From the IMG/VR virus record IMGVR_UViG_3300005613_000002, positions 1 through 64,000 of that record: 64,000 nt of DNA; one strand, given 5' to 3'. The notes beneath the pieces were generated by a model. That model was not told where the DNA came from and did not search any database. It saw only the letters and a list, made by a program, of their open reading frames with translations. Positions 7,625 to 44,064 of this stretch are shown here, in pieces. Numbering within the stretch: position 1 is the first letter of the stretch; each line of letters starts with the position of its first letter. A program made the position numbers and the translations under genes.

Positions 7625-8605
7625 TTAACCCACTGTTTCCATTTCAATTCCTTTAAATTTCCAGACTTCATGGGTATCGTTATATTTTATTCTTTTTACA
7701 TATTCATCAATTCTGTAACCAATCATTTCACCATATTCATCACTAACAAAAATACTATTAATATTTATAATTTCATTAAAAATTTCAGAATTTTCTTCAA
7801 TTTCACCTGTTTTAAATTTTATTGGAATGAAAAACTCAAACCGTCTATGTTCAAAACCAACAATTTTAACATGTAGAAATTCAGTTAATTGTTCAATTTT
7901 ATTTAAAACAGTAATATCATCACGAGACACTTTAATTGGGAATTCAAATTGTTTTGATAACTTAGAAATATCCTTTACTTCAAGTTTATCATAATCGACA
8001 TTAATATCTGTTTTAGTATCCCCACTTATAACAACCTCATGTTGATTTGTTTCTCCACTAAACACAATTTCATCATTATCGACATTCTGTAAATAATCTA
8101 ATGCTTTAACAAAACCAACTTCAACAGGTTTATTATTAAATATATGTTGAAGTTCAAAATCATCATCATTTGTTCTTCGTTCTTTAATATCTAATTCAAT
8201 AGATTCTGCAATTGTTTTACCTGCATGTTTGTGTTTATCATCAAAAAAACCATAATGTTCAAATCTTCTACCATATATGTCTTTCTTCCCATAACTACTA
8301 CCATGTTTATCAGCAGCAATTGCCATTTTACGTGGAGTTGCTGTTTTTATGAACTTATCTGCTTTTTTTAAAACATCATAATAATCTTTAACATATTTTT
8401 CATCAGTTTTACCAGCATAAAATTTTTCAAGTAATTGATTACGACTACGCATTCTTTGAGTGTGTTTATTACTTTCACCCAAATTGTTAGGGTCTGCTTT
8501 TAAAATTTCATGTTCAGTGTTAAATAAAGCAATACTAATTGCTGTCATTACCATATGAAATTTTAAATAGAACCAAAGGAGTATGTTTTTTAAAAACTTT
8601 GGCAT
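7625..8605 (-). CDS. Hypothetical protein with N-terminal hydrophobic segment
   Basis: 326-aa ORF; start abuts the stop of the upstream gene. Confidence 0.7.
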   Translation of the reverse strand: MPKFLKNILLWFYLKFHMVMTAISIALFNTEHEILKADPNNLGESNKHTQRMRSRNQLLEKFYAGKTDEKYVKDYYDVLKKADKFIKTATPRKMAIAADKHGSSYGKKDIYGRRFEHYGFFDDKHKHAGKTIAESIELDIKERRTNDDDFELQHIFNNKPVEVGFVKALDYLQNVDNDEIVFSGETNQHEVVISGDTKTDINVDYDKLEVKDISKLSKQFEFPIKVSRDDITVLNKIEQLTEFLHVKIVGFEHRRFEFFIPIKFKTGEIEENSEIFNEIININSIFVSDEYGEMIGYRIDEYVKRIKYNDTHEVWKFKGIEMETVG

Positions 8606-10005
8606 TATTCAGATACTGTTTCTAATGATTTTTCTTTATTAGTTTTAACTGCATTTTTATAAAACTCTGCACGTTTTTTTGTTACATTAGCTAAATGATA
8701 ATCTTCTTTAAAATCTTCATGTAATTGTCCACCAATTCGTTTTCTTAAATCAGCATCAAGTATTAAACTTTTTAAACCTTTTTTCCAATATTTTTGTGGA
8801 CGTTTTACTGATGGAATTAGAATACAATTCTCCATATGTTTACCATGTACATTATATGGTGGAATATCTGAACAAACAATAGGTAATTTTCTTGTCCAAC
8901 ATTCAACTTGTTTTAGATTGGATTTCATCCTATTAAATGAATTATCAGCTAGTGGTGCGATAACTATATCTGTTTCATCTAATACGTTTGCATACATATT
9001 AGCTTTTTTTGTCCAACGTCTTCCAAAATTACCTTCATCTTCATAAGATACATTTCTTTCGAAATTCATTAACCATTCTAAATAATCAGTATTAGTAATA
9101 ATTTTATGATTATCAGTTAATATTTTCTCATATACTAAATATATACTTTCTTCAGATGTGATACTTCTTTTGTTTGTGTTAAATATTTTCCCTCTATATT
9201 TTTCTCTTATTTCATCATTAATATTTGGTATTGAATCAATATCTCCTTTTGACTTATTTATTGCTTTAATTACTTCATTCGTCCACAATCCTAAATCTTT
9301 TAATTCATCAGCAAATTCTTGATTAAATGTAATATCTGTAGTACTTCCCTCAGTATCCCAACCAGCAATAATTATTTTAAATTTACCTTTAGTTGCTATA
9401 TCAGTATCCAACATATTTACAACATTTTTTAATTGTGCAATATCAATCATGTGTGATGAACCTGCCATATATGTTATTCTAACTTTACCATCTGGGTCTG
9501 GTTTCCAATTATTTCTAAATTGTTTCATCCATGATTCATCAACTGAATTATATAACACTTCAATATTATCTTTACCTGTTACTTTTTTTATTTCTTCAGC
9601 AAAAATATCTGTAGTTGTAGTTACGTAATCGCAAAGTTGTAAGTTTTGTATGATTGGAACATACATCTTTTTCTGTAAATTCATTTCATAAAATGGGTGG
9701 TCTTTATGTAAAACCCAATAGTCATCAACATCAACCATTAATAATGTTCCAGATGATTTCAATTCTTCAGCCAACTTATACATCTCTCTAATTTCAGGAA
9801 CAAGCTGACGATGATAATGTATAATATCGAATGTTTTTAAATATTCAATAACTTCAGGGTCTTTAAAATCTAATGAAGGGTTAATTTCAACGTGGAATTC
9901 ATCTGAATGATTTCTTTCAAGTTCCATTGCTGGTGTTTGTGTTCTAAAATAATTTACACCTGCACCATCTAAATTGTAAAATAATATTCTAATTTTATCG
10001 TTCAT
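8605..10005 (-). CDS. GT-B fold glycosyltransferase (GT4-like)
   Basis: G..YFR...P start, VDVDDYW, VTTTT..FA, DIVIAPL....FN..KS.LK..E....LPIVCSD.PPY. Confidence 0.8.
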   Translation of the reverse strand: MNDKIRILFYNLDGAGVNYFRTQTPAMELERNHSDEFHVEINPSLDFKDPEVIEYLKTFDIIHYHRQLVPEIREMYKLAEELKSSGTLLMVDVDDYWVLHKDHPFYEMNLQKKMYVPIIQNLQLCDYVTTTTDIFAEEIKKVTGKDNIEVLYNSVDESWMKQFRNNWKPDPDGKVRITYMAGSSHMIDIAQLKNVVNMLDTDIATKGKFKIIIAGWDTEGSTTDITFNQEFADELKDLGLWTNEVIKAINKSKGDIDSIPNINDEIREKYRGKIFNTNKRSITSEESIYLVYEKILTDNHKIITNTDYLEWLMNFERNVSYEDEGNFGRRWTKKANMYANVLDETDIVIAPLADNSFNRMKSNLKQVECWTRKLPIVCSDIPPYNVHGKHMENCILIPSVKRPQKYWKKGLKSLILDADLRKRIGGQLHEDFKEDYHLANVTKKRAEFYKNAVKTNKEKSLETVSE

Positions 10006-10089
10006 GTTTCTTATAAAATTTTATAAATTTATGTAATTTATTATAAATACTAAAAATAATACAAAATAACCACATTTGAAAGAATAAGT

Positions 10090-10116
10090 AAAAAAAAGCC
10101 AACATATTGTTGGCTT
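10090..10116 (-). terminator. Intrinsic terminator
   Basis: aagccaaca-ta-tgttggctt inverted repeat with U-tract on minus strand. Confidence 0.7.
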
Positions 10117-10150
10117 AATTAAATCAATTGGTATTATTGTGTTATTAGGA

Positions 10151-10480
10151 TTATTCTTTATCTATCTTTTTCTTTATTTTTGTAGATTTAGTTGTTACTT
10201 TAGGTGGAGTTTTTTTTCTTACCTTAGATTTAGGTTCGTTATTCATCAGATTGGCAAATTCAGCATCACTAACTTCTACTACGGTGATTAAATTTTCAAC
10301 TCTTAATTTACGTACTGACATCGGTAATGATTTTACTGTTAAATAAATTGATTTACCTGCCTTAATTGTAATTTTTTTTAATGTTAGATTATCAACATAA
10401 CTAATTTCCAATGGTGAATTATGTTTAAAATCACGTTTAGCACTAAGATTTGTTATATTTGTTATTTTATATATATTCAT
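10151..10480 (-). CDS. Hypothetical protein with Lys-rich C-terminus
   Basis: 109-aa ORF in operon packing. Confidence 0.65.
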   Translation of the reverse strand: MNIYKITNITNLSAKRDFKHNSPLEISYVDNLTLKKITIKAGKSIYLTVKSLPMSVRKLRVENLITVVEVSDAEFANLMNNEPKSKVRKKTPPKVTTKSTKIKKKIDKE

Positions 10481-11912: not shown

Positions 11913-12430
11913 TATTTATAAATTCTTTTATATATTAATTTTTTAAAATCTTCAATAGGAACTTTCACTATAAGGTCTTTACGTCCCACTCTACTATATC
12001 TTCTATAATATTTCAAATTAATTTTACTACAAAATGTAATTGCTTCACCATCTTCTTCATCAGCTTTTTTTATTCCATTTTCAACTAATTCTAATAAATC
12101 AATTCGTTTAACAAATTCAAAACAATCTACATTTTCAAAAGCAATTGTATCCATATATTCAGAACGAATCCACCCTGTTCTACCTATAACGTTAACTAAT
12201 TCAATCCATGCATAACCTAAATTAGTTCCTTCCTTCAAACTTTTAACATCAAAACGTTCATACTTGTTATCCTTAACACACACAACATCCCAATGTTCTA
12301 TCATATTTTGATTTTTTGTTGATAAGAAAGACTTATAATTGTTATTCCCCATCAATTTACAAAATAAAAGTTCACTTTCAGTTCCCTTTCTAGTATCATT
12401 AACTATTTTATTACTTAACCAATTATTCAC
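11912..12430 (-). CDS. Putative PD-(D/E)XK nuclease-fold protein
   Basis: G...E...EHWDV...FDVKS pattern; GTG start overlapping the upstream stop. Confidence 0.5.
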   Translation of the reverse strand: MNNWLSNKIVNDTRKGTESELLFCKLMGNNNYKSFLSTKNQNMIEHWDVVCVKDNKYERFDVKSLKEGTNLGYAWIELVNVIGRTGWIRSEYMDTIAFENVDCFEFVKRIDLLELVENGIKKADEEDGEAITFCSKINLKYYRRYSRVGRKDLIVKVPIEDFKKLIYKRIYK

Positions 12431-15400
12431 TATCCAGTACTTTCAATAAATTCAATTGCTTTTACTGGTATATCTTCAGGAGAAGCATATCTTTTACATG
12501 CTGCTCTATGTGTATAACAATAAAAACCCTTTTTATCTGCACCTAATGATACACCAGCAGATTTTGATGTTTTTTCTGTGAAACCTTTTGGTTTACTTAA
12601 ACCATGAACTCTACCACCTTCATGATAACTTGAACCACCAGTAAGATATTTAGAAATTTTTTCCTTCATATCTTTACTAATGTTTTTTGATCTCATTAAG
12701 GACTCTTTAGTGTTTTTATATTTTGTTTTTTTCTTTGATTCTTGTAATGGTTGTGATTTCATTATTTCAGTCACAACACCTTTTAATTTAAATGAAAACT
12801 GAATCTTTCTCCAATCAGTTAATTTATTAGACATAAATGGTTTCCCACCATTTTTTGTGTTAACAGCTAATGTTACATGAGGTATTTTATTATTTGTTGG
12901 GTAACCTGAAACTCCAACTGCCATAACTTTATCATCTAATCCATAATTAATAACATTAAGTTCAACTTCCTTACCTAAATCTTGTTCATATTTTGGGTCA
13001 ATTCTACCCATATTTAATGTCATATGATGTGCATACTCTTTCCAACCTTCAGGAATCATTTTACCAAACACACTTAACAATTGTTTATGTGATGTTTCAT
13101 CAAGTAATACACAACTATATAAAACATCACCATCCCAATCAGATGATTCTAACATTGTTTCTTGTTTTGATTCATCAAGTTTTAAAATTGTTGCATTTTC
13201 TTCTTTTGTTGAAAAAATTAATTCATTACCAACCATTTCATATTTTTTTGTAAAATCTTTAACATATTTTTTACCTTTACCTTTTTTCACATAAGCAATA
13301 GTTATATGTGGATGATAATTTGGAAATGTTGAAACATTTGGCAATTTTTTCATCACACTATTGATTTTATTTAAAAGTTCAGATTCTACATCAAATTTAA
13401 CAACATCAAAATCTTCATTCTCAAAAATTGATATTTTATTAACTTTAATCTTAATTTCCTTTAAGTCAAAATTTTCCTTATATAAATTGAAAACATCATC
13501 ATTAGTTACATTATCTTTAAATCCATATAATGCAGTAACATGTGGTTCATTTTCAATACCAAATTCACCATTAACCTCATAAATATCATCCTTATCAATT
13601 TTTGATGTCAAGTTACTCCATTTAGGAATATCAAGTGACAACATTAATACACCATATTCAACCTTTTCAGTTTTTGATTCATTTAATGTGACACTAGTAG
13701 ATTCATTTTTATTGACTAAACTTAATAATTCTTCTTTATTATTCAAGACTTTATCATTGTAAACTTTCAATAATAAAGATTTTTGCATATCACCAATTTC
13801 TTTTCCTTTTAAACCAGCATTCATTAAATCATTACCGTTAACGGCTAATTCAGCAGTAGTTTTAGGGTATTTACCCTGTAATAATTCATTTGCTGCATTT
13901 TGTAATTCAGTTGGAATTATTTTACTTTGTAATGATTTTGGTGAAATGACGAACATATTATGAGCTATAGACCTTGCACTAACTTTATTAGTTACATCAT
14001 GACTAAGACCTAAATCTAATGCTCTAATTTCTTTATATGTATCAATATCACCCTTCAAATTATTTTTATAAAATTCAGCAGGATTTTCTAATAATCTAGT
14101 TAATAAATAAATAAACTCACCCATTGTTTTCACTAAATCAAATGGACTTCTATCTATTGTAGATTGTTTAATGTCAAAACCAAATATATTATTAAATAAT
14201 CCAGTATCTTTTAATAATTGTGCACCACTTCTAATATTTCCTTTAGTTACAATTTTATCAAATTCAGTAATAACTCTTTCTGGTGGAATTTCTTTAATTC
14301 TTTCAGAATTTTTTTGAATCATACCCATTGTATTTGGTTCAATCGTAAAATTGAAACGAGATGAAAATTGTACAGCACGTAACATTCTTAATGGGTCATC
14401 AGCAAATGCTTCAGGATTAACAACACGAATTATTTTATTTTTTAAATCTTCTTGACCACCATATGGGTCAATAATATCACCATTAACATCTTTAGCTATC
14501 GCATTAATGGTGAAATCTCTACGTTCTAAATCTTTCTCAATCGGTAATTCATGATCTGAACTAACTTCAAAACCTTTATGACCACCAACACCTGTTGCCT
14601 TTTCTGTTCTTGGAATGGCGATGTCTATATCTTCTGTCGAACCTTTAGGTTTAAATTTTAACACCCCAAACGATTTTCCAACAGCATCAACTCTACCATA
14701 TTTTGATAATAGTTGTTCTAATTTATCAAAAGCAACACCAGTTATTAAGATATCTAAATCTTTAGATTCTTTACCTAAAAAACCATCACGTACAGCACCA
14801 CCAACTGAAAATATTTTCCCACCAAGTTCTTCAACTTCACCCTTAAATGGTAAATCTTCTAATGACATTAAATCTGCTTCATCAATCGTTTTCATTTCAT
14901 TATTTTTTGCAAAGTTATCATTTTCTAAATAACTATCATTATCTTTTGATATTTTTTCATCAAATCTTGCTTCAAAACCTTCATTAATTAAAACATTTCT
15001 GAAATCATATTTAGGGTTTTTTTGTTTTGCTCTCCTTAAAAATTCCTCAAACACTGGCTTACCTTCTTCAATTTTTGGCACATCTTTCCAATATGGGTCT
15101 TCATCAAATCTATCTTCTGGGTCTTTCATCATTACATTAGATTCACCAAGAAAAAAAGCAGTAGAACTACCTAATCTTTGAACTGTGATAAATTCAGTAG
15201 GTAATTTTTTATCCCAACGTTCTACGAAATTTATTAATCCAAGTTTATCTAATTTATCTAATATTACATTATGAACAACATTTGCTGATTCTTCAATATA
15301 TAAATTCCCTTCTTTATCAATTACACCTCTCACATATTGACCAATATTATCCAATGTATTAGGATTTTTTATGATTGTAACATTTTCATCCTTATATACA

Positions 15401-17862
15401 ATCTTTTCACCATCTTCACGGTTTTTTTGTGATTTAAAATCTTTTTCAAAATCATCAAACTCTGGCTTCATTCCATGTCTTCTTTCAAGATATTTATCAC
15501 CAACACCTTCAATATTTAATTCAGGTTCAAGATTATATCGTTTATTAACATATTTTTGTATTGATTCTTCACTATAATCCAATAGTCTACCAATTTCGAT
15601 AGTTATCTCAGGTGATTCATTTTTAAAATAACCACCATAACTTTTTAAAATTTCAACTAATCTTTTAGCCTTTCTTTCTGCTTCTGGTGTATCACGATAA
15701 ATAATTCTTCTATCATCATTATGGTTTGTTTGTTCAATTGGTATATCTTTAAATTGATTATTTATTATCGCATATTTTAAATAAGTACTATTAATTCCCT
15801 TTAAATTAAAGAAACCAACATCTTTTTTACCATTAACCATTGCAGCCATTGCATCTTTAGCATGATATGCTTCCGAAGCATCTATTGTTTCTTTCAGTGG
15901 TTTAATATTAAGGTTACTAATATCTCCTTGATTACAAGCAACACTTGTATTACCAAGACCACCTAACTTACATTTATCTTTTACTTCAACACTACTACTA
16001 CCTTTCATTGAAGAAGTAATACGTTCACTCATAATAAAACTATCAGAAGTAGCATCATCAACATGGTTATATTCTAAATCTTCAGCATACATTGCAGAAT
16101 TTGCTTTTAAATCATTTTCAATTGAAGGTGATGTGTCAGTTATATCATATGATGGAAAACCATCATTACCAATATTACCATCTGTAGAATATAAAGCAGT
16201 CCCATCTTCATCAACATTTAATTGTTCTGGTTGTTTATCTGATGTATTATAATAATTTCCAAATCCAACATCAAAAAAACCAATACTACCATCTTTTTTA
16301 TAACCTAAATTTTTTGGACTATAAAAATCAGTACTTTCAGAACCATATTTTTGTAATTCCTCAAATATTTTCAACAAACTAAAAAAGAATGTACCATCTT
16401 CGGTATTCTTATTAAAATAATTATCAATATCACTTTTATTAACTTTACCAACATATTTAGTGTTATGAAAATATTCTTCAAGAGCAATTCTATAATTAAT
16501 ATTAAATATATTATCAAACACATAATTCAATCTGTTTAACATTTTTTCAAAATATGGTACGTCTGTTTTTAGCTTTTCTAAAATAATCACATAATAATCT
16601 TTATCACCTTCTGTTTTTATTGAATAAACTTTATATGGTTCTGCAATATATTTTAATTCTTTGCCAATCAATGATAAATTCTCATAAGCTTCACTTCTAT
16701 CTGATGTTACTTTTAAAACTAAATTATTTCCAATATCATATGCTGAACCAAATGAACCTGAATCCATATATTCAAGAGTTACACCATATTTTTCAGCAAC
16801 TACATTAGCTATTTTATCAGCTAAATTCCTTTCAATACCTTCATTAATTGATTTTTTCTTTTCAATTATTTCAATTTTATTTAATGGTTCTCTATTATAA
16901 AATCCTAATTTAATTAAATGATCTTGTAGTGTAATTAAATTATTATAAAACTTTTTCTTATCTTTCGCAACATTAAGATTTTCTTTAATATTATTTACAA
17001 CAGCATGTAAATTTTCAACCATATATGGGACAGCACCCAATGGTTGTGTAGTTAAATTATCATTGTTTGATACAAAATGTACAAAATCTTCATTAATCAC
17101 ACTATCATTATCACCATCATCAACACTATATGGTACTTGCGCCCACATTCCATGACGAACTTCCCAAGTATTCCCTATGTCTGAAAGTATATCATCATTA
17201 CCATCAGCAAAATTATATAATTCATACATTTGATTTTTTTTATTTCTTAATGGATTATAATGTGTATTATATACTTCATCATTTAAACCATAATCAGTTA
17301 ATACTATTGTTGGTTGACCATATCTTAATACTTCACCATATGTACTTGGTCTACCCATATCACCAACCTCTTGGCTATAGTTATTAACGAATTCTATAAG
17401 TTCCATAACAAACTCATTCTCATGCATTTCTTCTTCAACACCAGCATCAAGAGTAAATAAATCCTTATCTCTCCAATTTTTTTGGTCATTTCTTTTTAAA
17501 TAATAAAGTAACGAGTTTAAATCTGGAATACCTGTTAATTCTTTAATTCTACTTTGAGTAACTTTTTTTGCTTTTTCTGAAAGAATCCAAGTATATTGAT
17601 TTTCATCAAAATCAAATACTTTTGTAACTATATCTTGAGTATCTTGATATGTACCAGCACCAGATTCGGCTTCATTTTGTGCTTGACCTTTAGGGTTTTT
17701 TGCTAATTTTAACACTACCTTATCATCAATATCATAAACTGCTCTACCAGTACCACTACCAATTTTAGTTAATTTTGCATTAGCATGTTTTATCTTACCG
17801 TTAAACGATCTAATATTTTGGATTTCGTTGATAAAATTATCAACATATTCATTATATATCAT
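12430..17862 (-). CDS. 1810-aa multidomain protein: two kinase-like domains, class II CCA-adding/poly(A) polymerase domain, two 2H phosphoesterase domains, small C-terminal domain
   Basis: Kinase 1: IGSGTGR, VLK, GD, DYG. Kinase 2: DSGSFG, VLK, TDF..KN, FFDVG. NTase: GGAVRD, DLD, RRDFTINA, DDPLRMLRA. 2H: HVT/HIT and HMT/HVT pairs. Confidence 0.88.
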   Translation of the reverse strand: MIYNEYVDNFINEIQNIRSFNGKIKHANAKLTKIGSGTGRAVYDIDDKVVLKLAKNPKGQAQNEAESGAGTYQDTQDIVTKVFDFDENQYTWILSEKAKKVTQSRIKELTGIPDLNSLLYYLKRNDQKNWRDKDLFTLDAGVEEEMHENEFVMELIEFVNNYSQEVGDMGRPSTYGEVLRYGQPTIVLTDYGLNDEVYNTHYNPLRNKKNQMYELYNFADGNDDILSDIGNTWEVRHGMWAQVPYSVDDGDNDSVINEDFVHFVSNNDNLTTQPLGAVPYMVENLHAVVNNIKENLNVAKDKKKFYNNLITLQDHLIKLGFYNREPLNKIEIIEKKKSINEGIERNLADKIANVVAEKYGVTLEYMDSGSFGSAYDIGNNLVLKVTSDRSEAYENLSLIGKELKYIAEPYKVYSIKTEGDKDYYVIILEKLKTDVPYFEKMLNRLNYVFDNIFNINYRIALEEYFHNTKYVGKVNKSDIDNYFNKNTEDGTFFFSLLKIFEELQKYGSESTDFYSPKNLGYKKDGSIGFFDVGFGNYYNTSDKQPEQLNVDEDGTALYSTDGNIGNDGFPSYDITDTSPSIENDLKANSAMYAEDLEYNHVDDATSDSFIMSERITSSMKGSSSVEVKDKCKLGGLGNTSVACNQGDISNLNIKPLKETIDASEAYHAKDAMAAMVNGKKDVGFFNLKGINSTYLKYAIINNQFKDIPIEQTNHNDDRRIIYRDTPEAERKAKRLVEILKSYGGYFKNESPEITIEIGRLLDYSEESIQKYVNKRYNLEPELNIEGVGDKYLERRHGMKPEFDDFEKDFKSQKNREDGEKIVYKDENVTIIKNPNTLDNIGQYVRGVIDKEGNLYIEESANVVHNVILDKLDKLGLINFVERWDKKLPTEFITVQRLGSSTAFFLGESNVMMKDPEDRFDEDPYWKDVPKIEEGKPVFEEFLRRAKQKNPKYDFRNVLINEGFEARFDEKISKDNDSYLENDNFAKNNEMKTIDEADLMSLEDLPFKGEVEELGGKIFSVGGAVRDGFLGKESKDLDILITGVAFDKLEQLLSKYGRVDAVGKSFGVLKFKPKGSTEDIDIAIPRTEKATGVGGHKGFEVSSDHELPIEKDLERRDFTINAIAKDVNGDIIDPYGGQEDLKNKIIRVVNPEAFADDPLRMLRAVQFSSRFNFTIEPNTMGMIQKNSERIKEIPPERVITEFDKIVTKGNIRSGAQLLKDTGLFNNIFGFDIKQSTIDRSPFDLVKTMGEFIYLLTRLLENPAEFYKNNLKGDIDTYKEIRALDLGLSHDVTNKVSARSIAHNMFVISPKSLQSKIIPTELQNAANELLQGKYPKTTAELAVNGNDLMNAGLKGKEIGDMQKSLLLKVYNDKVLNNKEELLSLVNKNESTSVTLNESKTEKVEYGVLMLSLDIPKWSNLTSKIDKDDIYEVNGEFGIENEPHVTALYGFKDNVTNDDVFNLYKENFDLKEIKIKVNKISIFENEDFDVVKFDVESELLNKINSVMKKLPNVSTFPNYHPHITIAYVKKGKGKKYVKDFTKKYEMVGNELIFSTKEENATILKLDESKQETMLESSDWDGDVLYSCVLLDETSHKQLLSVFGKMIPEGWKEYAHHMTLNMGRIDPKYEQDLGKEVELNVINYGLDDKVMAVGVSGYPTNNKIPHVTLAVNTKNGGKPFMSNKLTDWRKIQFSFKLKGVVTEIMKSQPLQESKKKTKYKNTKESLMRSKNISKDMKEKISKYLTGGSSYHEGGRVHGLSKPKGFTEKTSKSAGVSLGADKKGFYCYTHRAACKRYASPEDIPVKAIEFIESTG

Positions 17863-40036: not shown

Positions 40037-41131
40037 TTACATACTAAATTTATCTTGTTTCCTAGCTTTACGTCTTAATTCATTTACTTCTCTAAAAGCA
40101 TTTGGATTAAACGTTTCTTTTTTTACAATCGATACCAAATGATTAAATTCGTTTTCAGTAATAACCTGACCAACATAACCATCATTCTTTAACACATAAC
40201 TTTTTGCTCTTGAAGTACTACTATTCCCCTCAGAATCTAATGTAGCATCAAATGTAAATTCAAGAAGTTCTTGAACTTTTTCATGTACACTTAAAGTAAT
40301 ATTTTCTTTAGTTTTCTTTAATGCTTTTTCCATTAAATCAAGAAAATGTTCACGATTACTTTTTTTCAAGTTATTATATGTATCAGTAAATTCTTGTTTC
40401 GATGTTTTATCTTTCACTTCAGATATAATTGCAAGCGAACCATAACAATCACGAATCATCATATCCCATACTTGTTCGGCATAACTAAACGATGGGAATT
40501 TATCAATAGCAACAATTTCTTCATCAATTAATACTATAATACCAATCAAATTTTTTGGTCTTTCAAAATGAGCAATAAATTGTTCAAGTTTTTCATCATA
40601 CTTTTCGAAATATTTATTCAAATAATTACCAGTACTAGAAACAGTGTCTTTACCCAATTTTTCAATAGCTGGATAAATTCTTGAATAATCACCATTTTCA
40701 CCAATATTATCGAACAACATTTCACGCATACTAACTGGTATCATACGAAATTCTTGAGAATTTCTAAAATGACCTGTTTCAGAACCTTGAACACATCCAG
40801 CATCATGATAAGTAACAGTTTTATTCTTATCAATATAACCACCTTTAATCATTGCATGATTTTGCGCTTTTTGTTTTGTGATAACTGCCATTTGTGTTGG
40901 AACTATCACTTCCTTATTTTCTTTATTAGTCAAATCCATTTGACCATAAGAACTATTACTTGATACCAACGCAGTCAATGGATTAGCAAAACGAGTATCC
41001 AATGAATATTCAGCGTCTGTTGTTAAACAAACAATCTGCATGTTCATAATTGATTGAACAATTATATTTCCATCCACATCCTTAACTGGACGACAACCTT
41101 TTAATAGTTCTGTAAAATCTCTTGTATTCAT
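40037..41131 (-). CDS. ARPP-1 (DUF6569)-like protein
   Basis: Q-N-H...G-C-V-Q-G resembles the ARPP-1 QNR...SCVEQG pattern (from recall); 12-nt gap to the TROVE-like gene. Confidence 0.5.
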   Translation of the reverse strand: MNTRDFTELLKGCRPVKDVDGNIIVQSIMNMQIVCLTTDAEYSLDTRFANPLTALVSSNSSYGQMDLTNKENKEVIVPTQMAVITKQKAQNHAMIKGGYIDKNKTVTYHDAGCVQGSETGHFRNSQEFRMIPVSMREMLFDNIGENGDYSRIYPAIEKLGKDTVSSTGNYLNKYFEKYDEKLEQFIAHFERPKNLIGIIVLIDEEIVAIDKFPSFSYAEQVWDMMIRDCYGSLAIISEVKDKTSKQEFTDTYNNLKKSNREHFLDLMEKALKKTKENITLSVHEKVQELLEFTFDATLDSEGNSSTSRAKSYVLKNDGYVGQVITENEFNHLVSIVKKETFNPNAFREVNELRRKARKQDKFSM

Positions 41132-41143
41132 ATCGCTAAATTT

Positions 41144-42772
41144 TTATGCGTTTACACTTATTTTATTATTTCTCTTAACTGATGATGTTGAAATACTCAA
41201 CACTTGATTTTCCAACCAACGTTTTGTATCAATTTCAAGTAGTCTTGCTTGAATTTGTGGTTGTATTGCTACTGGATTATTAACTGCCATTGTAACAACA
41301 TCTGAACCTAATTTCCTAACATCAGCACCCATTTCAGCACTAGTTATTGGTGAAATTTGATATATTGGGATATTGCTTCCAGATTCATTTCTCCAAATAG
41401 AAATTACCTCATTAGTTAAACCATCATATGAATTTTCATATCCATCAGTTAAGATAAAAATTGCATCATATGGTTTTGTTGCATCTTCTTTCTTCAACAA
41501 CCAAATAAATGTGCTTGCCAAATCAGTAGTCTCACCCTCAGTTTCACAAAAATTAATATTCTTTGTTGACTTAGTTAATACCCTTGCAGTAAAATCTGCA
41601 ATTGCTCTTGGTGTATTTTTTGATTCTACCTTGTTCCCATTCATTGAATTACTTCTATCTACAATAACACCAATATTTTTATAATAGAAATCTTTAATTT
41701 TTTTCTTTTCAGCAAGATTATCAATAGCTATTTTTAATTCTTCTGTCCAACCATTTTCATAACCTGTTTTATATAATGCAAGAAAATCAGTAGCTTTTTC
41801 AACATTTACATGTTTTTCAACACCCAATTTTGCTGTTGATTTAGTTTGACGAACTTGTTGATTAATTGATGTCACTTCAACATTTTTTCTGATTAAAGCC
41901 TTTGTTGCTTCTCTCTGAATTTTTGTTGACCACATTGAATGATATTGTGGGTGTTTCGTGCTTGAAACCAAACCTATCAATATTTCTTCAGGAACTGTTT
42001 TAATTCCATTAATATCGGTTTTTGCTTTTTGATAATCACTTAATAATGGAAAATCAGCCACATTATAATTTAAATTATTATCCATTTTAAATAAAAACAT
42101 CAATAATTTAAATGCACGAAGTGAATCGCCATTAAAATATTTCAAAATTAAATTATTTGCAATAGACATTTCTTTAGCATCACTAAACAAACCATTATTA
42201 ACTGCTTGTTTACTAGCAATTGAAATTAAAATGCTTGTCTTTTTTTGACCATAGACATGTTTTAATATTTCAGCAATTTTATTACGATATTTCAATGAAT
42301 AAAATTCAATATTTGATTGACCCCAAATATATCCAAGTATAATTTTCCTTGTTCTTTCGTTGTTAACTTTTAATTTTTTCAAATCCATAAACAAACGAAG
42401 CACATATGGAATACCATTTTCACCAAGATTATTCAATGCAGTTAGAACTGCTTTATCACAAACCCCATTATCATACCAATCAATTGGATTAACAATATTA
42501 CATGCACCACCTTTTAACGTGTTTTTAAACTCATTTAACAACACTTCAGATATATAACGACCAGTTGCACCCTTTTGAGTTGCAATAATCAATGGTAGCT
42601 CCTTTGAGAGATTATATTGACTATTAATCTGTGCACGTATAGCATTCAATTGTTCATCTCTACTGTGATAGTAAGTGGCACTACTCTTAGCACCAGAAGC
42701 AATTGTTAAGCCGTCTATCAAAGACTGTTTGATAGAACTAAGCATTCTCTGTGTTAATACCAAATTTTCCAT
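41144..42772 (-). CDS. TROVE/Ro60-like protein (helical N-terminal region plus C-terminal vWA domain)
   Basis: vWA MIDAS: VIVDRSNSM, TDLA, ILTDG; about 380-aa helical N-terminal region; size and architecture fit Ro60-like proteins. Confidence 0.65.
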   Translation of the reverse strand: MENLVLTQRMLSSIKQSLIDGLTIASGAKSSATYYHSRDEQLNAIRAQINSQYNLSKELPLIIATQKGATGRYISEVLLNEFKNTLKGGACNIVNPIDWYDNGVCDKAVLTALNNLGENGIPYVLRLFMDLKKLKVNNERTRKIILGYIWGQSNIEFYSLKYRNKIAEILKHVYGQKKTSILISIASKQAVNNGLFSDAKEMSIANNLILKYFNGDSLRAFKLLMFLFKMDNNLNYNVADFPLLSDYQKAKTDINGIKTVPEEILIGLVSSTKHPQYHSMWSTKIQREATKALIRKNVEVTSINQQVRQTKSTAKLGVEKHVNVEKATDFLALYKTGYENGWTEELKIAIDNLAEKKKIKDFYYKNIGVIVDRSNSMNGNKVESKNTPRAIADFTARVLTKSTKNINFCETEGETTDLASTFIWLLKKEDATKPYDAIFILTDGYENSYDGLTNEVISIWRNESGSNIPIYQISPITSAEMGADVRKLGSDVVTMAVNNPVAIQPQIQARLLEIDTKRWLENQVLSISTSSVKRNNKISVNA

Positions 42773-42956: not shown

Positions 42957-43047
42957 GGAAAGAAGTGTGATTGTATTTTTTGTACGTTTGTGTCGCCACT
43001 ATCTGGGCGACAAATTTCAATTTACTGTAAACACAATAAGTTCTTCC
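42957..43047 (-). ncRNA. Y-RNA-like element D (conserved stem plus GC hairpin, no tRNA fold)
   Basis: GGAAGAAC.UAUUGUGUUUACAGUAA...; AUUGUGUUU pairs with AAAUACAAU; inner UGUCGCC/GGCGACA hairpin. Confidence 0.6.
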
Positions 43048-43176
43048 ATAAAACAAATTTTTTGAAAAAAATCAATATTTTACTATTGATAAAAACCATT
43101 TTTAACCTACACATCATTTTACTGATGATTCAAATGTTAGGTGGGGTGATGTTTTTATAAACATCCAAAAAACTTT

Positions 43177-43329
43177 GGGAATATTTTTAAAGTATTTGTT
43201 GCTTTTTGTGTGCAAGTTTTAACGACTTGTGACTTTACCGTTTGTCTATATCCCCAATTTTATTTTTTATTGGTGGGGATAGAAGGATTCGAACCTTCAA
43301 TAATTACTGTAAACACTTATAGTTTTCCC
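43177..43329 (-). ncRNA. Y-RNA-like element C: circularly permuted tRNA (T arm-acceptor 3'-CCA-spacer-acceptor 5'-D arm-anticodon arm) inside the conserved stem
   Basis: GAAGG-UUCGAAU-CCUUC-UAUCCCC-ACCA (43298-43271) precedes GGGGAUA-UA-GAC...GUC-A-CAAGU-CGUUAAA-ACUUG (43255-43213). Confidence 0.8.
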
Positions 43330-43467
43330 TTAATATCTTTAACCTATTGAACTGTGTGTTTATGTGAGGCACTACTTGGAATGTAATTTATCAGTTTTAC
43401 TAGCCTTTTCATGTTCATTCAATTTAGGAATCCGTTTCCATTTTGTTTGGATTCTTAGGTCAAATTG

Positions 43468-43602
43468 TGGGGAGAATCGGATTCGAACCGATAATCTATT
43501 GATTTCAACTCAATTGCTTTAACCTATTACTGTAAACACTAATAGTTCTCTTTTAAAGAGTAATGAGATAGTATTATTTGTTTTTGTTTTTGCTATCTCC
43601 CC
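43468..43602 (-). ncRNA. tRNA-like element B with the conserved stem inserted in the D-arm (anticodon-loop triplet UGA)
   Basis: 7-bp GGGGAGA/UCUCCCC acceptor, AUUGA/UCAAU anticodon stem, AUCGG-UUCGAAU-CCGAU T arm; about 62-nt insertion after C11. Confidence 0.75.
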
Positions 43603-43835
43603 ATTTATTAAATCCTGTAATTTTAATTAATACTTTATGTTTCTCTCTTTTCAGTAGCGTACATATCTCGTTAATCCTAAATTACAGAATTATTTTTTTA
43701 AATCTAAGCACCATGCCATTTCATAGGTATTAAAACCGCCAAAATTGGGGGTCTGCTTAAATTTATTTCATTATTTTAAAGAACTTTAAGCCAGTTACGT
43801 TTACATAAAGTAAAGAGGCTTTACTGACTATCATG

Positions 43836-43923
43836 TAGCGGGAGAGGGATTCGAACCCCCGTTAAACCTTATTCAGGACTCCGTGCTTATGAGACAGGTG
43901 AGATACCGCTTCTCCATCCCGCA
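43836..43923 (-). tRNA. tRNA with CAU anticodon (Met or Ile2) and a 20-nt variable arm; no encoded CCA
   Basis: UGCGGGA/UCCCGCU acceptor, GAG/CUC D stem, CUCAUAA loop, GGGGG-UUCGAAU-CCCUC T arm. Confidence 0.75.
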
Positions 43924-43937
43924 ATATATTTTTTATA

Positions 43938-44064
43938 AAAGGATAGTTTATTTGTTATATGTTGTTTTTACAAAGTTGGATTTGAACCAACGGCATACTG
44001 CTTATAAGGCAATCACTCTAACCGACTGAGTTATTTGTTACTGTAATAACAATTAGTTTCCTTT
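43938..44064 (-). ncRNA. Element A: tRNA-Ile(UAU)-like cloverleaf (43967-44040) whose acceptor stem is extended by the conserved stem
   Basis: ACUC/GAGU D stem, AUUGC-CUUAUAA-GCAGU, GUUGG-UUCAAAU-CCAAC; outer AAAGGA/UCCUUU and UUGUUAU/AUAACAA pairs. Confidence 0.8.

What the first reader, a model, noticed from the sequence alone, without database searches (positions are those of the whole stretch)
43468..43602. Element B: tRNA interrupted in the D-arm by the conserved stem (intron-like)
The halves are in normal order, but about 62 nt (43530-43591) sit between C11 and the D-loop. In this insert the A-rich strand comes first and the ACAGU strand second, so the same stem forms as an internal hairpin (AAACA/UGUUU, UAAUA/UAUUA, UCUC/GAGA). 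Removing the insert near ACAG|U leaves a 73-74-nt cloverleaf with triplet UGA but a short variable loop (unlike tRNA-Ser) and a 3' ACAA end. In element A the same ACAG|U junction coincides with tRNA position 1, hinting at a processing site. In element C it would leave a longer variable region, so the fit is not uniform.
Basis: partly seen in the sequence, partly recalled or inferred. Interest (0 to 1): 0.78.

Follow-up and report, generated by a model that had tools for sequence, protein, structure and literature searches.

The report
Phage Y-RNA-like tRNA with Ro60 handle
The "interrupted tRNA" is real, but the insert is best read as a built-in docking hairpin, not an intron, that would tie a tRNA-shaped RNA to a Ro60-type RNA-quality-control protein encoded next door in a jumbo phage; it is a new layout of the known Ro60/Y-RNA partnership.

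Summary
On the minus strand, 43602-43468 is a tRNA cloverleaf with 62 nt (43591-43530) inserted between C11 and U12; deleting them gives a 74-nt ARAGORN tRNA (anticodon UGA).

The intron reading does not hold.
- The same bulged helix (RRRAAC...KUUU(A/U/C)CAG|UAA paired to an A-rich strand) occurs four times here and nowhere else in the 321-kb phage genome.
- It occurs about 160 times in related phages: as a bare hairpin, around a whole tRNA, around a circularly permuted tRNA-like domain, and inside the D stem (this element).
- All 26 orthologues of element B carry the insert. Their structure covaries (11 of 32 pairs).
- Metatranscriptome contigs of a relative cover the locus unspliced.

The gene directly downstream (42772-41144) has no Pfam hit, but its model (pLDDT 92) matches only Ro60/Rsr structures over its full length (Z up to 18.5). 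It follows the RNA array in 28 of 29 loci, and in homologues of 24-29% identity.

Best explanation: an array of Y-RNA-like RNAs whose conserved helix is the Ro60 handle. Element B is a new topology, a non-permuted tRNA mimic with free acceptor ends. Binding and function are inferred, not shown.

The parts
43468..43602 (-). Element B: tRNA-like RNA with free acceptor ends (GGGGAGA/UCUCCCC, A73, then CAA) and a helix module inside the D stem
   Evidence: Sequence. ARAGORN after removing the insert. Structure counts on 26 orthologues.
43530..43591 (-). The inserted module. A-rich strand; upper helix AAUACUA (43575-43569) paired with UAGUGUUU (43541-43534); basal hairpin CUCUU-UAA-AAGAG (43560-43548); unpaired AAC (43547-43545); junction ACAG (43533-43530).
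   Evidence: The motif is shared with the other modules.
43565..43571 (-). CUAUCUC inside the insert, complementary to tRNA positions 4-10 (GAGAUAG, 43599-43593). This is a possible alternative pairing.
   Evidence: The minimum-free-energy fold uses it. It pairs in 97.8% of cells. Two compensatory pairs exist, but in one lineage only (L164).
43503..43509 (-). Anticodon-like loop GUUGAAA (triplet UGA)
   Evidence: Identical loop in 16 of 26 orthologues; UGA triplet in about 19 of 26; other triplets in the rest.
43937..44064 (-). Type A: the same helix formed by leader and trailer around a complete tRNA (44040-43967, anticodon UAU)
43835..43923 (-). tRNA (anticodon CAU) inside the array. It is 89 nt here because of a long variable arm; it is 72-76 nt in relatives.
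43175..43330 (-). Type C: circularly permuted tRNA-like domain enclosed by the same helix at the variable-arm position. Order: T arm, acceptor 3' strand, ACCA, 15-nt linker, acceptor 5' strand, D arm, anticodon arm.
   Evidence: Fold. Across 30 orthologues, 17 of 33 pairs have compensatory changes, including all 7 acceptor pairs.
42957..43047 (-). Type D: the same helix (GGAAGAAC...GUGUUUACAG|UAA with ...AAUACAAUCACACUUCUUUCC) closing a GC-rich hairpin. It is the last module before the protein gene.
41144..42772 (-). Ro60/Rsr-like protein (TROVE-type helical ring plus vWA domain with a DxSxS MIDAS motif), 542 aa. It is the presumed partner of the helix.
   Evidence: AlphaFold2 model, pLDDT 91.8. 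Foldseek: the top 12 PDB hits are all Ro60. VIA-align Z 18.5-12.5 over about 400 residues. MIDAS motif. Co-occurrence in 28 of 29 loci.
40037..41131 (-). ARPP-1 domain protein, the conserved downstream neighbour of the Ro60-like gene
   Evidence: Pfam E-value 2.9e-15. The same gene pair follows distant homologues. The two are fused in P0265.

Best explanation
Element B is one member of an array of Y-RNA-like non-coding RNAs. The array is encoded just upstream of a divergent Ro60 (Rsr/TROVE-vWA) gene in a 321-kb jumbo phage, on the same strand.

**The module.** Every member carries the same bulged helix:
- a basal helix;
- an unpaired AAC;
- an upper helix, (U/A)AGUKUUU paired with AAAUACU(A/U);
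- then NCAG-UAA facing an A-rich strand.

I take this helix to be the docking site (handle) for the Ro60-like ring. The cargo at the NCAG end differs between members: a small hairpin, a whole tRNA, a circularly permuted tRNA-like domain (as in bacterial YrlA), or, in element B, a complete tRNA body.

**Element B.** The far end of the helix is closed by a loop and the helix leaves the tRNA between D-stem positions 11 and 12. The tRNA therefore keeps free 5' and 3' ends, with ACCA encoded in some relatives.

**Likely working.** The array is transcribed, with 5' ends presumably trimmed by RNase P and 3' ends by host or phage enzymes. Ro60 would hold the helix. The L-shaped tRNA domain would then act as the effector arm, either recruiting a tRNA-binding enzyme or occupying a tRNA-targeting one, as part of an RNA surveillance, repair or counter-defence unit together with the neighbouring ARPP protein.

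**Shown:** the RNA structure and its conservation; the protein fold; the gene linkage over deep divergence; presence of the unspliced locus in RNA libraries of a relative.

**Inferred:** Ro60 binding to this helix, the processing steps, and the biological role.
For: **The helix is a reused module.**
- It occurs four times here and only here in the genome.
- About 160 distinct copies occur in relatives, with four cargo types.

**The structures covary.**
- B type: 11 of 32 pairs compensatory, 98.9% of cells paired, 0 of 500 shuffles as good.
- C type: 17 of 33 pairs compensatory.
- Hairpin type: 2 of 16 pairs compensatory; the helix sequence itself is nearly invariant, as expected of a protein site.

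**The downstream protein has the Ro60 fold.**
- The model has pLDDT 91.8 and pTM 0.90.
- The best PDB matches are exclusively Ro60/Rsr/phage Ro60: Foldseek probability 1.00, E 1.6e-7 to 4.6e-4.
- VIA-align gives Z 18.5-12.5 with 393-412 aligned residues spanning 12-530. The next class is vWA domains alone, at Z 10 or less.
- The DxSxS MIDAS motif is conserved.
- The vWA part aligns with the Bxz1 TROVE protein (hhalign E 8.6e-5).
- Protein-atlas neighbours are TROVE/vWA_Ro60 clusters.

**RNA and protein are linked.**
- 28 of 29 module-bearing loci with enough flank have this gene within 3 kb on the same strand.
- Four homologues of about 21-29% identity sit behind 0.65-1.3 kb of non-coding DNA. 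Three of these gaps (L202, L205, L206) hold tRNA-like pieces joined to the same kind of helix. The fourth, L208, has a different repeated motif and no called tRNA.
- One such locus gives a weak Rfam YrlA hit (L205:1514-1636, 27.8 bits, E 0.022).

**Precedent.**
- Y RNAs lie within 4 kb of Ro60 on the same strand.
- YrlA RNAs are permuted tRNA mimics.
- The M. smegmatis YrlA is cut by RNase P and gains CCA (PMC4201824).
- A phage Ro60 binds two upstream Y-like RNAs (PMC12135203).

**Expression in a relative.** Four metatranscriptomes hold the locus as continuous contigs. Depth is 49.9 and 43.3, against 0 at the 3' end of the helicase gene and 18.4 and 14.9 on the Ro60 gene. There are no joints.
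Against: - No binding data. The complex prediction was not run, so it says nothing either way.
- The Ro-binding motifs known from bacteria (GNCGAAN0-1G, 'CGAA') and vertebrates (GGUCCGA) are absent from the helix.
- Rfam's Y_RNA and YrlA models do not match the window.
- Pfam TROVE does not detect the protein, nor anything else in the genome.
- The RNA evidence comes from a relative, from assembled contigs that drop rare variants and small RNAs, and the libraries could contain DNA.
- The triplet UGA is kept in about three quarters of B orthologues, and some encode ACCA. A decoding role is therefore not excluded.
Confidence: 0.72

Rival explanations
1. **Intron-like insert.** An endonuclease cuts at NCAG|U and at the other end of the insert, and a ligase joins C11 to U12, giving a 74-nt tRNA(UGA) that decodes.
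For: - Removing the insert gives a clean cloverleaf.
- The phage encodes an Rnl1-type RNA ligase and a CCA-type nucleotidyltransferase domain.
- The UGA triplet is kept in about 19 of 26 orthologues, and ACCA is encoded in 7 of 26.
Against: - No orthologue lacks the insert.
- The identical helix occurs as stand-alone hairpins and around whole or permuted tRNAs.
- The junction letters and offsets vary.
- No ribozyme or group I match.
- The position 11/12 is unknown for tRNA introns.
- Contigs from RNA libraries are unspliced.
- The genome already has a canonical long-arm tRNA-Ser(UGA) at 147438-147527.
Confidence: 0.07
2. **Processing stems.** The helices are RNase III-type or phage-nuclease sites that cut a polycistronic tRNA precursor into pieces. 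The Ro60-like gene is merely adjacent.
For: - In type A the helix is a leader-trailer duplex.
- The locus is assembled as one long transcript-like contig.
- In D. radiodurans, Y RNAs and a tRNA share a precursor (PMC4201824).
Against: - In B the helix lies inside the tRNA, and in C it encloses a permuted domain. Cutting there would destroy these RNAs rather than mature them.
- The invariant unpaired AAC and NCAGUAA point to sequence-specific recognition.
- The helix tracks the Ro60-like gene through homologues of 24-29% identity.
Confidence: 0.1
3. **One large ornate RNA.** The whole 1.1-1.5 kb transcript is a single structured RNA of the GOLLD or ROOL kind, with repeated helices serving its architecture or multimerisation.
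For: - Phage-borne and next to tRNAs.
- Assembled as one contig in RNA libraries.
- Many conserved helices.
Against: - The number and order of modules differ between close relatives, from 2 to 6 or more.
- In L156 a possible small ORF (its nuclease-like look judged by eye, not tested) lies between B and A.
- Internal terminator-like hairpins are present.
- No Rfam GOLLD or ROOL match.
Confidence: 0.04
4. **Decayed genes.** These are tRNA genes disrupted by a small mobile repeat and have no function.
For: The repeat occurs in several copies and in several contexts.
Against: - Compensatory changes keep the tRNA helices and the hairpin intact across 26 orthologues.
- The position in the genome is fixed.
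- The locus is present at high depth in RNA libraries.
Confidence: 0.02

Closest known systems
Bacterial and phage YrlA-type Y RNAs with Ro60/Rsr (Chen et al. 2014, PMC4201824; Wang et al. 2018, bioRxiv 10.1101/312249)
   Same: - Non-coding RNAs encoded next to a Ro60 orthologue and on its strand.
- Several per locus, one kind with a tRNA-like domain (T arm GGUUCGAAUCC, D arm with GG) and another a simple hairpin.
- Co-transcribed with a true tRNA.
- A 7-bp acceptor stem with CCA, as in the M. smegmatis YrlA that RNase P cleaves (type C here).
   Different: - The helix lacks GNCGAAN0-1G, and Rfam YrlA does not match the window.
- In YrlA the Ro stem replaces the anticodon stem and the acceptor stem is a closed loop.
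- In element B nothing is permuted: the acceptor ends are free, the anticodon arm is present and the helix is a closed hairpin leaving the D stem at 11/12.
- In type C the helix sits at the variable-arm position and an anticodon arm is kept.
- There are four to six or more modules per locus.
Thermus phage phiLo Ro60 with Yrl1 and Yrl2 (PMC12135203; PDB 9KOP, 9L5Y)
   Same: - A phage-encoded Ro60 ring plus vWA domain, with Y-like RNAs directly upstream.
- Structural match to the model here (Z 14.8).
   Different: - The phiLo RNAs were picked by a CGAA motif and a stem-bulge-stem shape; no tRNA-like domain is reported for them.
- The protein here is not recognised by Pfam TROVE.
- The protein here is paired with an ARPP gene.
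Circularly permuted and split tRNA genes (Cyanidioschyzon, Nanoarchaeum) and two-piece tmRNA
   Same: - Type C has the 3' half before the 5' half.
- Rfam's permuted-tmRNA model gives a weak partial hit at 43247-43298 (23.8 bits).
   Different: - No bulge-helix-bulge motif and no known splicing endonuclease in bacteria.
- Many relatives close the acceptor stem with a 5-nt loop lacking CCA.
- Element B itself is not permuted.
tRNA introns (group I in the anticodon loop; archaeal BHB introns)
   Same: An extra segment inside a tRNA gene whose removal restores a cloverleaf.
   Different: - The position is 11/12 in the D stem.
- No ribozyme core and no BHB motif.
- No copies without the insert.
- The same element occurs outside tRNAs.

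Membership tests
Y RNA / YrlA | Encoded within about 4 kb of a Ro60 orthologue, on the same strand | tested here: met
   Element B ends 696 nt upstream of the Ro60-fold gene, and both are on the minus strand. The same holds in 28 of 29 relatives.
Y RNA / YrlA | Ro-binding motif GNCGAAN0-1G (bacteria) or GGUCCGA (animals) in a stem formed by the 5' and 3' ends | tested here: not met
   The conserved helix reads RRRAAC...KUUUNCAGUAA and has no conserved CGAA. In B the helix is an internal hairpin, not the termini.
Y RNA / YrlA | Match to Rfam Y_RNA or YrlA covariance models | tested here: not met
   No hit in the window even at E up to 10. The only hit is weak, beside a distant homologue (L205, 27.8 bits against a cut-off of 69).
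Y RNA / YrlA | tRNA-like domain with T and D arms and a closed (loop-capped) acceptor stem | tested here: inconclusive
   T and D arms are present in B and C. The acceptor stem is closed or linker-joined in C but open in B.
Y RNA / YrlA | Bound by Ro60 in vivo or in vitro | not testable with these tools
   The complex prediction was not run. No immunoprecipitation data exist.
Ro60 / Rsr (TROVE + vWA) | Ring of HEAT-like helices followed by a vWA domain with MIDAS | tested here: met
   Model pLDDT 91.8. Ro60 structures are the only full-length matches, Z 18.5-12.5. D372, S374 and S376 are conserved.
Ro60 / Rsr (TROVE + vWA) | Match to Pfam TROVE (PF05731) | tested here: not met
   No hit for the protein, for 10 homologues, or in the six-frame genome at E up to 10.
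Canonical decoding tRNA | Contiguous cloverleaf found by tRNA finders | tested here: not met
   ARAGORN and Rfam at the gathering threshold miss it. It is found only after the insert is removed.
Canonical decoding tRNA | Anticodon conserved among orthologues | tested here: inconclusive
   UGA in about 19 of 26. Six others have UUG, UUA, GUA, UUC or UGG.
tRNA intron (group I or BHB) | Ribozyme core or bulge-helix-bulge motif, and copies of the gene without the intron | tested here: not met
   No Rfam intron or ribozyme hit. All 26 orthologues carry the insert. No joints in RNA contigs.

The most novel reading that the evidence does not exclude
Element B is a real, chargeable tRNA (free G1-C72 acceptor stem, A73, CCA encoded or added, mostly anticodon UGA) that is permanently tethered to a Ro60 ring through a hairpin. 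I infer from tRNA geometry (not tested here) that this hairpin projects from the tRNA core where class II tRNAs carry their long variable arm. If so, it would be an aminoacylated Y RNA that brings Ro60, and perhaps the ARPP enzyme, to a synthetase, EF-Tu or the ribosome. Alternatively, the helix could imitate the serine tRNA's long arm. The conserved alternative pairing (GAGAUAG with CUAUCUC) could switch the RNA between a tRNA form and a form with a free 3' tail, the kind of end that Ro60 is reported to bind in misfolded RNAs.
Probability: 0.15. Interest if true: 0.9.

Novelty: new variant of a known kind. Interest (0 to 1): 0.62.

Why it matters
Ro60 and its Y RNAs are conserved from bacteria to humans, where Ro60 is a lupus and Sjogren autoantigen. 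What the tRNA-like arm of bacterial Y RNAs does is still unknown.

This phage family offers three things:
- a Ro60 clade that sequence models miss;
- a different, sharply defined RNA handle;
- a natural series in which the same handle is joined to a tRNA body in four ways, at the acceptor end, at the variable-arm site, in the D stem with a closed acceptor, and in the D stem with free ends.

That series is a ready-made experiment on which tRNA features the effector needs.

It is also a warning for annotation. 'Split', 'permuted' or 'intron-containing' tRNAs next to an unannotated vWA protein in phage genomes may be Y RNAs.

The constant pairing with an ARPP enzyme suggests an undescribed RNA-surveillance or counter-defence unit in jumbo phages.

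Tried and rejected
- **General phage promoter.** Rejected: the motif has only four copies in 321 kb, all in this locus.
- **Known ribozyme, GOLLD/ROOL, Y_RNA or YrlA in the window.** No Rfam hits.
- **CRISPR-repeat mimic.** Considered from memory. The repeats here are long bulged helices spaced 220-510 nt apart, and I saw no similarity; not pursued.
- **Sequence-level identification of the protein.** It failed with Pfam, PHROGs, PDB phmmer and a profile search, and a six-frame TROVE search of the genome. Only fold comparison worked.
- **GenBank phages.** No DNA match to the locus, and one unannotated huge phage for the protein.
- **RNA-seq of this exact phage.** No run holds it; the share of words was at most 0.07. 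A common relative (L156) was used instead.
- **Complex prediction of protein plus element B.** Counted but not folded, so it is no evidence.
- **An early impression corrected.** From 7 sequences I thought the anticodon loop of B was unconserved. With 26 sequences, GUUGAAA is the majority form.
- **Partner-strand search by duplex energy.** It mis-assigned some modules, so those were filtered out.

Full report
**Where we are.** The window is the first 64 kb of a 321,624-bp virus record with direct terminal repeats and about 28% G+C. Nearly all genes lie on the minus strand. The phage carries some 45 tRNA genes and a tmRNA at 122-160 kb. The finding lies elsewhere, in a 1.2-kb non-coding stretch at 42.9-44.1 kb. 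This stretch sits between a DnaB-like helicase gene (46018-44225) and an unannotated 542-aa gene (42772-41144), all on the minus strand.

**The observation.** Read on the minus strand, 43602-43468 is GGGGAGA-UA-GC, then a 62-nt insert (43591-43530), then UAAUAGGUUAAAGC, an anticodon arm with loop GUUGAAA, a 5-nt variable loop, a T arm with GGUUCGAAUCC, UCUCCCC, and ACAA.
- ARAGORN and Rfam at the gathering threshold report only two tRNAs in the window (44040-43967 and 43923-43835). Rfam's tRNA model matches element B only from position 9 to 63, at 28.8 bits.
- With 43530-43591 removed, ARAGORN calls a 74-nt tRNA with anticodon UGA.

The 13-mer GTGTTTACAGTAA is found three times exactly and once as a variant. 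These four copies are the only ones in the whole genome.

**A reusable module.** The helicase protein and the motif led to more than 50 related IMG/VR contigs with the same locus. In them the 5' strand (RRRAAC, 3-10 nt, KUUU(A/U/C)CAG, then UAA) pairs with an A-rich strand to give a bulged helix. The helix has four parts: a basal helix, an unpaired AAC with an asymmetric internal loop, a 7-8-bp upper helix, and an unpaired NCAG-UAA facing an A-rich run.

The cargo at the NCAG end comes in four kinds:
- **Type Y/D:** a small or GC-rich hairpin. Window copy: 43047-42957.
- **Type A:** a whole tRNA. Window copy: 44064-43937.
- **Type C:** a circularly permuted tRNA-like domain. Window copy: 43330-43175.
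- **Type B:** reversed topology, a closed hairpin inside a tRNA. This is the finding.

Type C is strongly supported. In 30 sequences, 17 of 33 pairs show compensatory changes, including all seven acceptor pairs. Some relatives join the acceptor strands through ACCA plus a 12-20-nt linker, others through GCCA plus a few bases, and others by a 5-nt loop without CCA.

**Element B in relatives.** I found 26 distinct orthologues. Every one has the insert, and none is uninterrupted.
- On their alignment, the cloverleaf plus inserted hairpin pairs in 98.9% of cells, and 11 of 32 pairs have compensatory changes. No shuffle out of 500 reached this, and slid controls reached at most 57%.
- The basal helix of the insert is a local hairpin (CUCNN-loop-NNGAG) that covaries.
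- The junction is UCAG more often than ACAG in B. Over all 162 modules it is ACAG 99, UCAG 58 and CCAG 5.
- In type A the tRNA starts anywhere from about 1 nt before to 4 nt after the junction. The coincidence with tRNA position 1 in this window is therefore not general.
- The loop GUUGAAA is kept in 16 of 26 orthologues and the triplet UGA in about 19. Seven encode ACCA at the 3' end.
- A heptamer in the insert (CUAUCUC) is complementary to tRNA positions 4-10 in all orthologues, and in L164 both sides have changed together. That is a single event, so it is only a hint of an alternative fold.

**The neighbour.** The 542-aa protein has no Pfam, PHROG or PDB sequence match, and Pfam TROVE finds nothing in the genome. 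It is very conserved, at 72-85% identity among relatives, and has a DxSxS MIDAS motif.
- A protein-atlas search pointed to TROVE/vWA_Ro60 clusters.
- The AlphaFold2 model is confident (pLDDT 91.8, pTM 0.90).
- Foldseek's top twelve PDB hits are all Ro60: human, Xenopus with Y RNA or misfolded RNA, Deinococcus Rsr, and Thermus phage phiLo (probability 1.00, E 1.6e-7 to 4.6e-4).
- The second-look aligner gives Z 18.5 to 12.5 with 393-412 aligned residues spanning nearly the whole chain. The next class is isolated vWA domains at Z 10 or less.
- hhalign aligns the vWA part with the TROVE protein of mycobacteriophage Bxz1 (E 8.6e-5).

I conclude that this is a divergent Ro60/Rsr orthologue.

**Linkage.**
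- In 28 of 29 distinct module-bearing loci with at least 1.5 kb of following sequence, this gene lies within 3 kb on the same strand.
- Four homologues of about 21-29% identity, from other phage lineages, are each followed by an ARPP-1/ARPP-2 gene, as here (41131-40037). One protein is a fusion of the two.
- Each of these four homologues is also preceded by 0.65-1.3 kb of non-coding DNA.
- In L202, L205 and L206 that DNA holds tRNA-like pieces joined to helices with the same RRGAAC...NCAG signature. L202 has a version permuted at the same D-stem junction as element B. L205 has a weak Rfam YrlA match (27.8 bits, E 0.022).
- L208 has a different motif repeated four times and no called tRNA.

**What is known.**
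- Chen et al. 2014 (PMC4201824) showed that bacterial and phage Y RNAs lie within 4 kb of Ro60 on the same strand.
- At least one Y RNA per species has a tRNA-like domain and another is a plain hairpin.
- The M. smegmatis YrlA, with a 7-bp acceptor stem, is cut by RNase P and receives CCA.
- A Y RNA can share a precursor with a tRNA.
- Wang et al. (10.1101/312249) describe most YrlAs as circularly permuted tRNAs with closed acceptor stems.
- A phage Ro60 that binds two upstream Y-like RNAs has been solved (PMC12135203).
- Jumbo phages with TROVE proteins have been noted (PMC7824862).

The locus here fits this pattern in layout. It differs in the handle (none of the known Ro-binding motifs GNCGAAN0-1G, CGAA or GGUCCGA), in the number of RNAs, and in topology. 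In YrlA the Ro stem replaces the anticodon stem. Here it sits at the variable-arm site (C), around the acceptor end (A) or in the D stem (B). I infer, but have not tested, that in three dimensions positions 11/12 and the variable loop lie side by side, so that B and C may present the helix from the same face of the tRNA core.

**Expression.** No run holds this exact phage. A common relative does have data: L156 encodes the same Ro60-like protein as P0028, which is seen on 19 contigs. Its locus is held by about 20 metatranscriptomes, mostly activated sludge. Laid on L156:7000-11800, contigs from four runs cover the array continuously.
- X12 covers 8140-10345 at depth 49.9 with no differences.
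- X13 covers 8139-9649 at depth 43.3.
- The 3' end of the helicase gene has depth 0, and the Ro60 gene has 18.4 and 14.9.
- No joints are reported, and element B of that phage (8259-8393) is crossed unspliced.

Contigs drop rare forms, such libraries miss tRNA-sized RNAs, and DNA carry-over cannot be formally excluded. The uneven depth argues for RNA.

**Verdict.** The feature is real and conserved. The intron reading is not supported. The best explanation (about 0.7) is a Y-RNA-like RNA in which a tRNA-shaped effector domain carries a built-in handle for the neighbouring Ro60. Element B is a new, non-permuted topology with free acceptor ends. Whether it is charged, what the tRNA arm recruits, and what the ARPP partner does are open. 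The phage also encodes an Rnl1-type RNA ligase and a CCA-type nucleotidyltransferase domain, but no RtcB. RNA end-healing is therefore available, but nothing ties it to this site.

Noticed in passing
window 40037-41131 (-); also L202:5605-6621, L205:3296-4330, L206:4662-5669, L208:4631-5692: An ARPP-1/ARPP-2 domain gene always follows the Ro60-like gene, and the two are fused in P0265 (884 aa). The ARPP paper (PMC9503650) lists other partners (HIRAN, WYL, a deacetylase) but not Ro60/vWA proteins, so this pairing may be undescribed.
   Followed up: partly
own genome outside the window: C1:122564-122659, 122817-122902, 123267-123351, 147846-147932: The main tRNA island holds twin genes for Pro, His, Gln, Asn (and probably Trp and Cys). 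One twin has normal length. The other is 84-96 nt because of a long variable arm, some capped by GAAA; such arms are normally found only on Leu, Ser and Tyr tRNAs.
   Followed up: partly
window 43835-43923 (-): The tRNA(CAU) inside the array is 89 nt here, with an insertion of about 19 nt forming a variable arm. Its orthologues in relatives are 72-76 nt (L048, L013, L156).
   Followed up: partly
window 43337-43462 (-): Another conserved RNA-like stretch lies between elements B and C. Its ends can pair (GACCUA...UAGGUU), and the flanks GACCTAAGA... and ...GTTCAAYRGGTCA recur in relatives. It has no module motif.
   Followed up: no
window 12430-17862 (-), domain at 14425-14811: A 1810-aa ORF contains a PolyA_pol/CCA-adding-type nucleotidyltransferase domain (85 bits).
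   Followed up: no
L156:8427-8860 and L156:9922-10730: In this relative a possible small ORF lies between elements B and A, and another ORF separates the array from the Ro60 gene. Their nuclease-like and KilAC/antirepressor-like looks were judged by eye and not tested. The array therefore tolerates insertions between modules.
   Followed up: no
window 43770-43790, 43185-43200; L048, L013, L156 in front of modules: A recurrent GTTCTTT(A/G)AA(A)ATA motif precedes several modules. It resembles the Bacteroidota -7 promoter element (TAnnTTTG, from memory), which hints at separate promoters and a Bacteroidota host. One homologue of the protein is labelled a Porphyromonadaceae MAG.
   Followed up: no
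window 43790-43832 (-): Just after the tRNA(CAU), where relatives have one or two hairpin modules, the window has only GAUAGUCAGUAAAG without the basal GAAGAAC. This looks like an eroded module.
   Followed up: no
L208:1800-3000: Upstream of a distant Ro60-like homologue (P0269), a different motif (GGCCRR..GUUGAUUAGAA) is repeated four times. No tRNA was called there by ARAGORN. The handle sequence seems to be lineage-specific.
   Followed up: no
own genome C1:159544-159617 and 132007-132367: A tRNA with anticodon CUA (it reads the TAG stop codon) and a tmRNA are present. Possible stop-codon reassignment in part of the genome was not examined.
   Followed up: no
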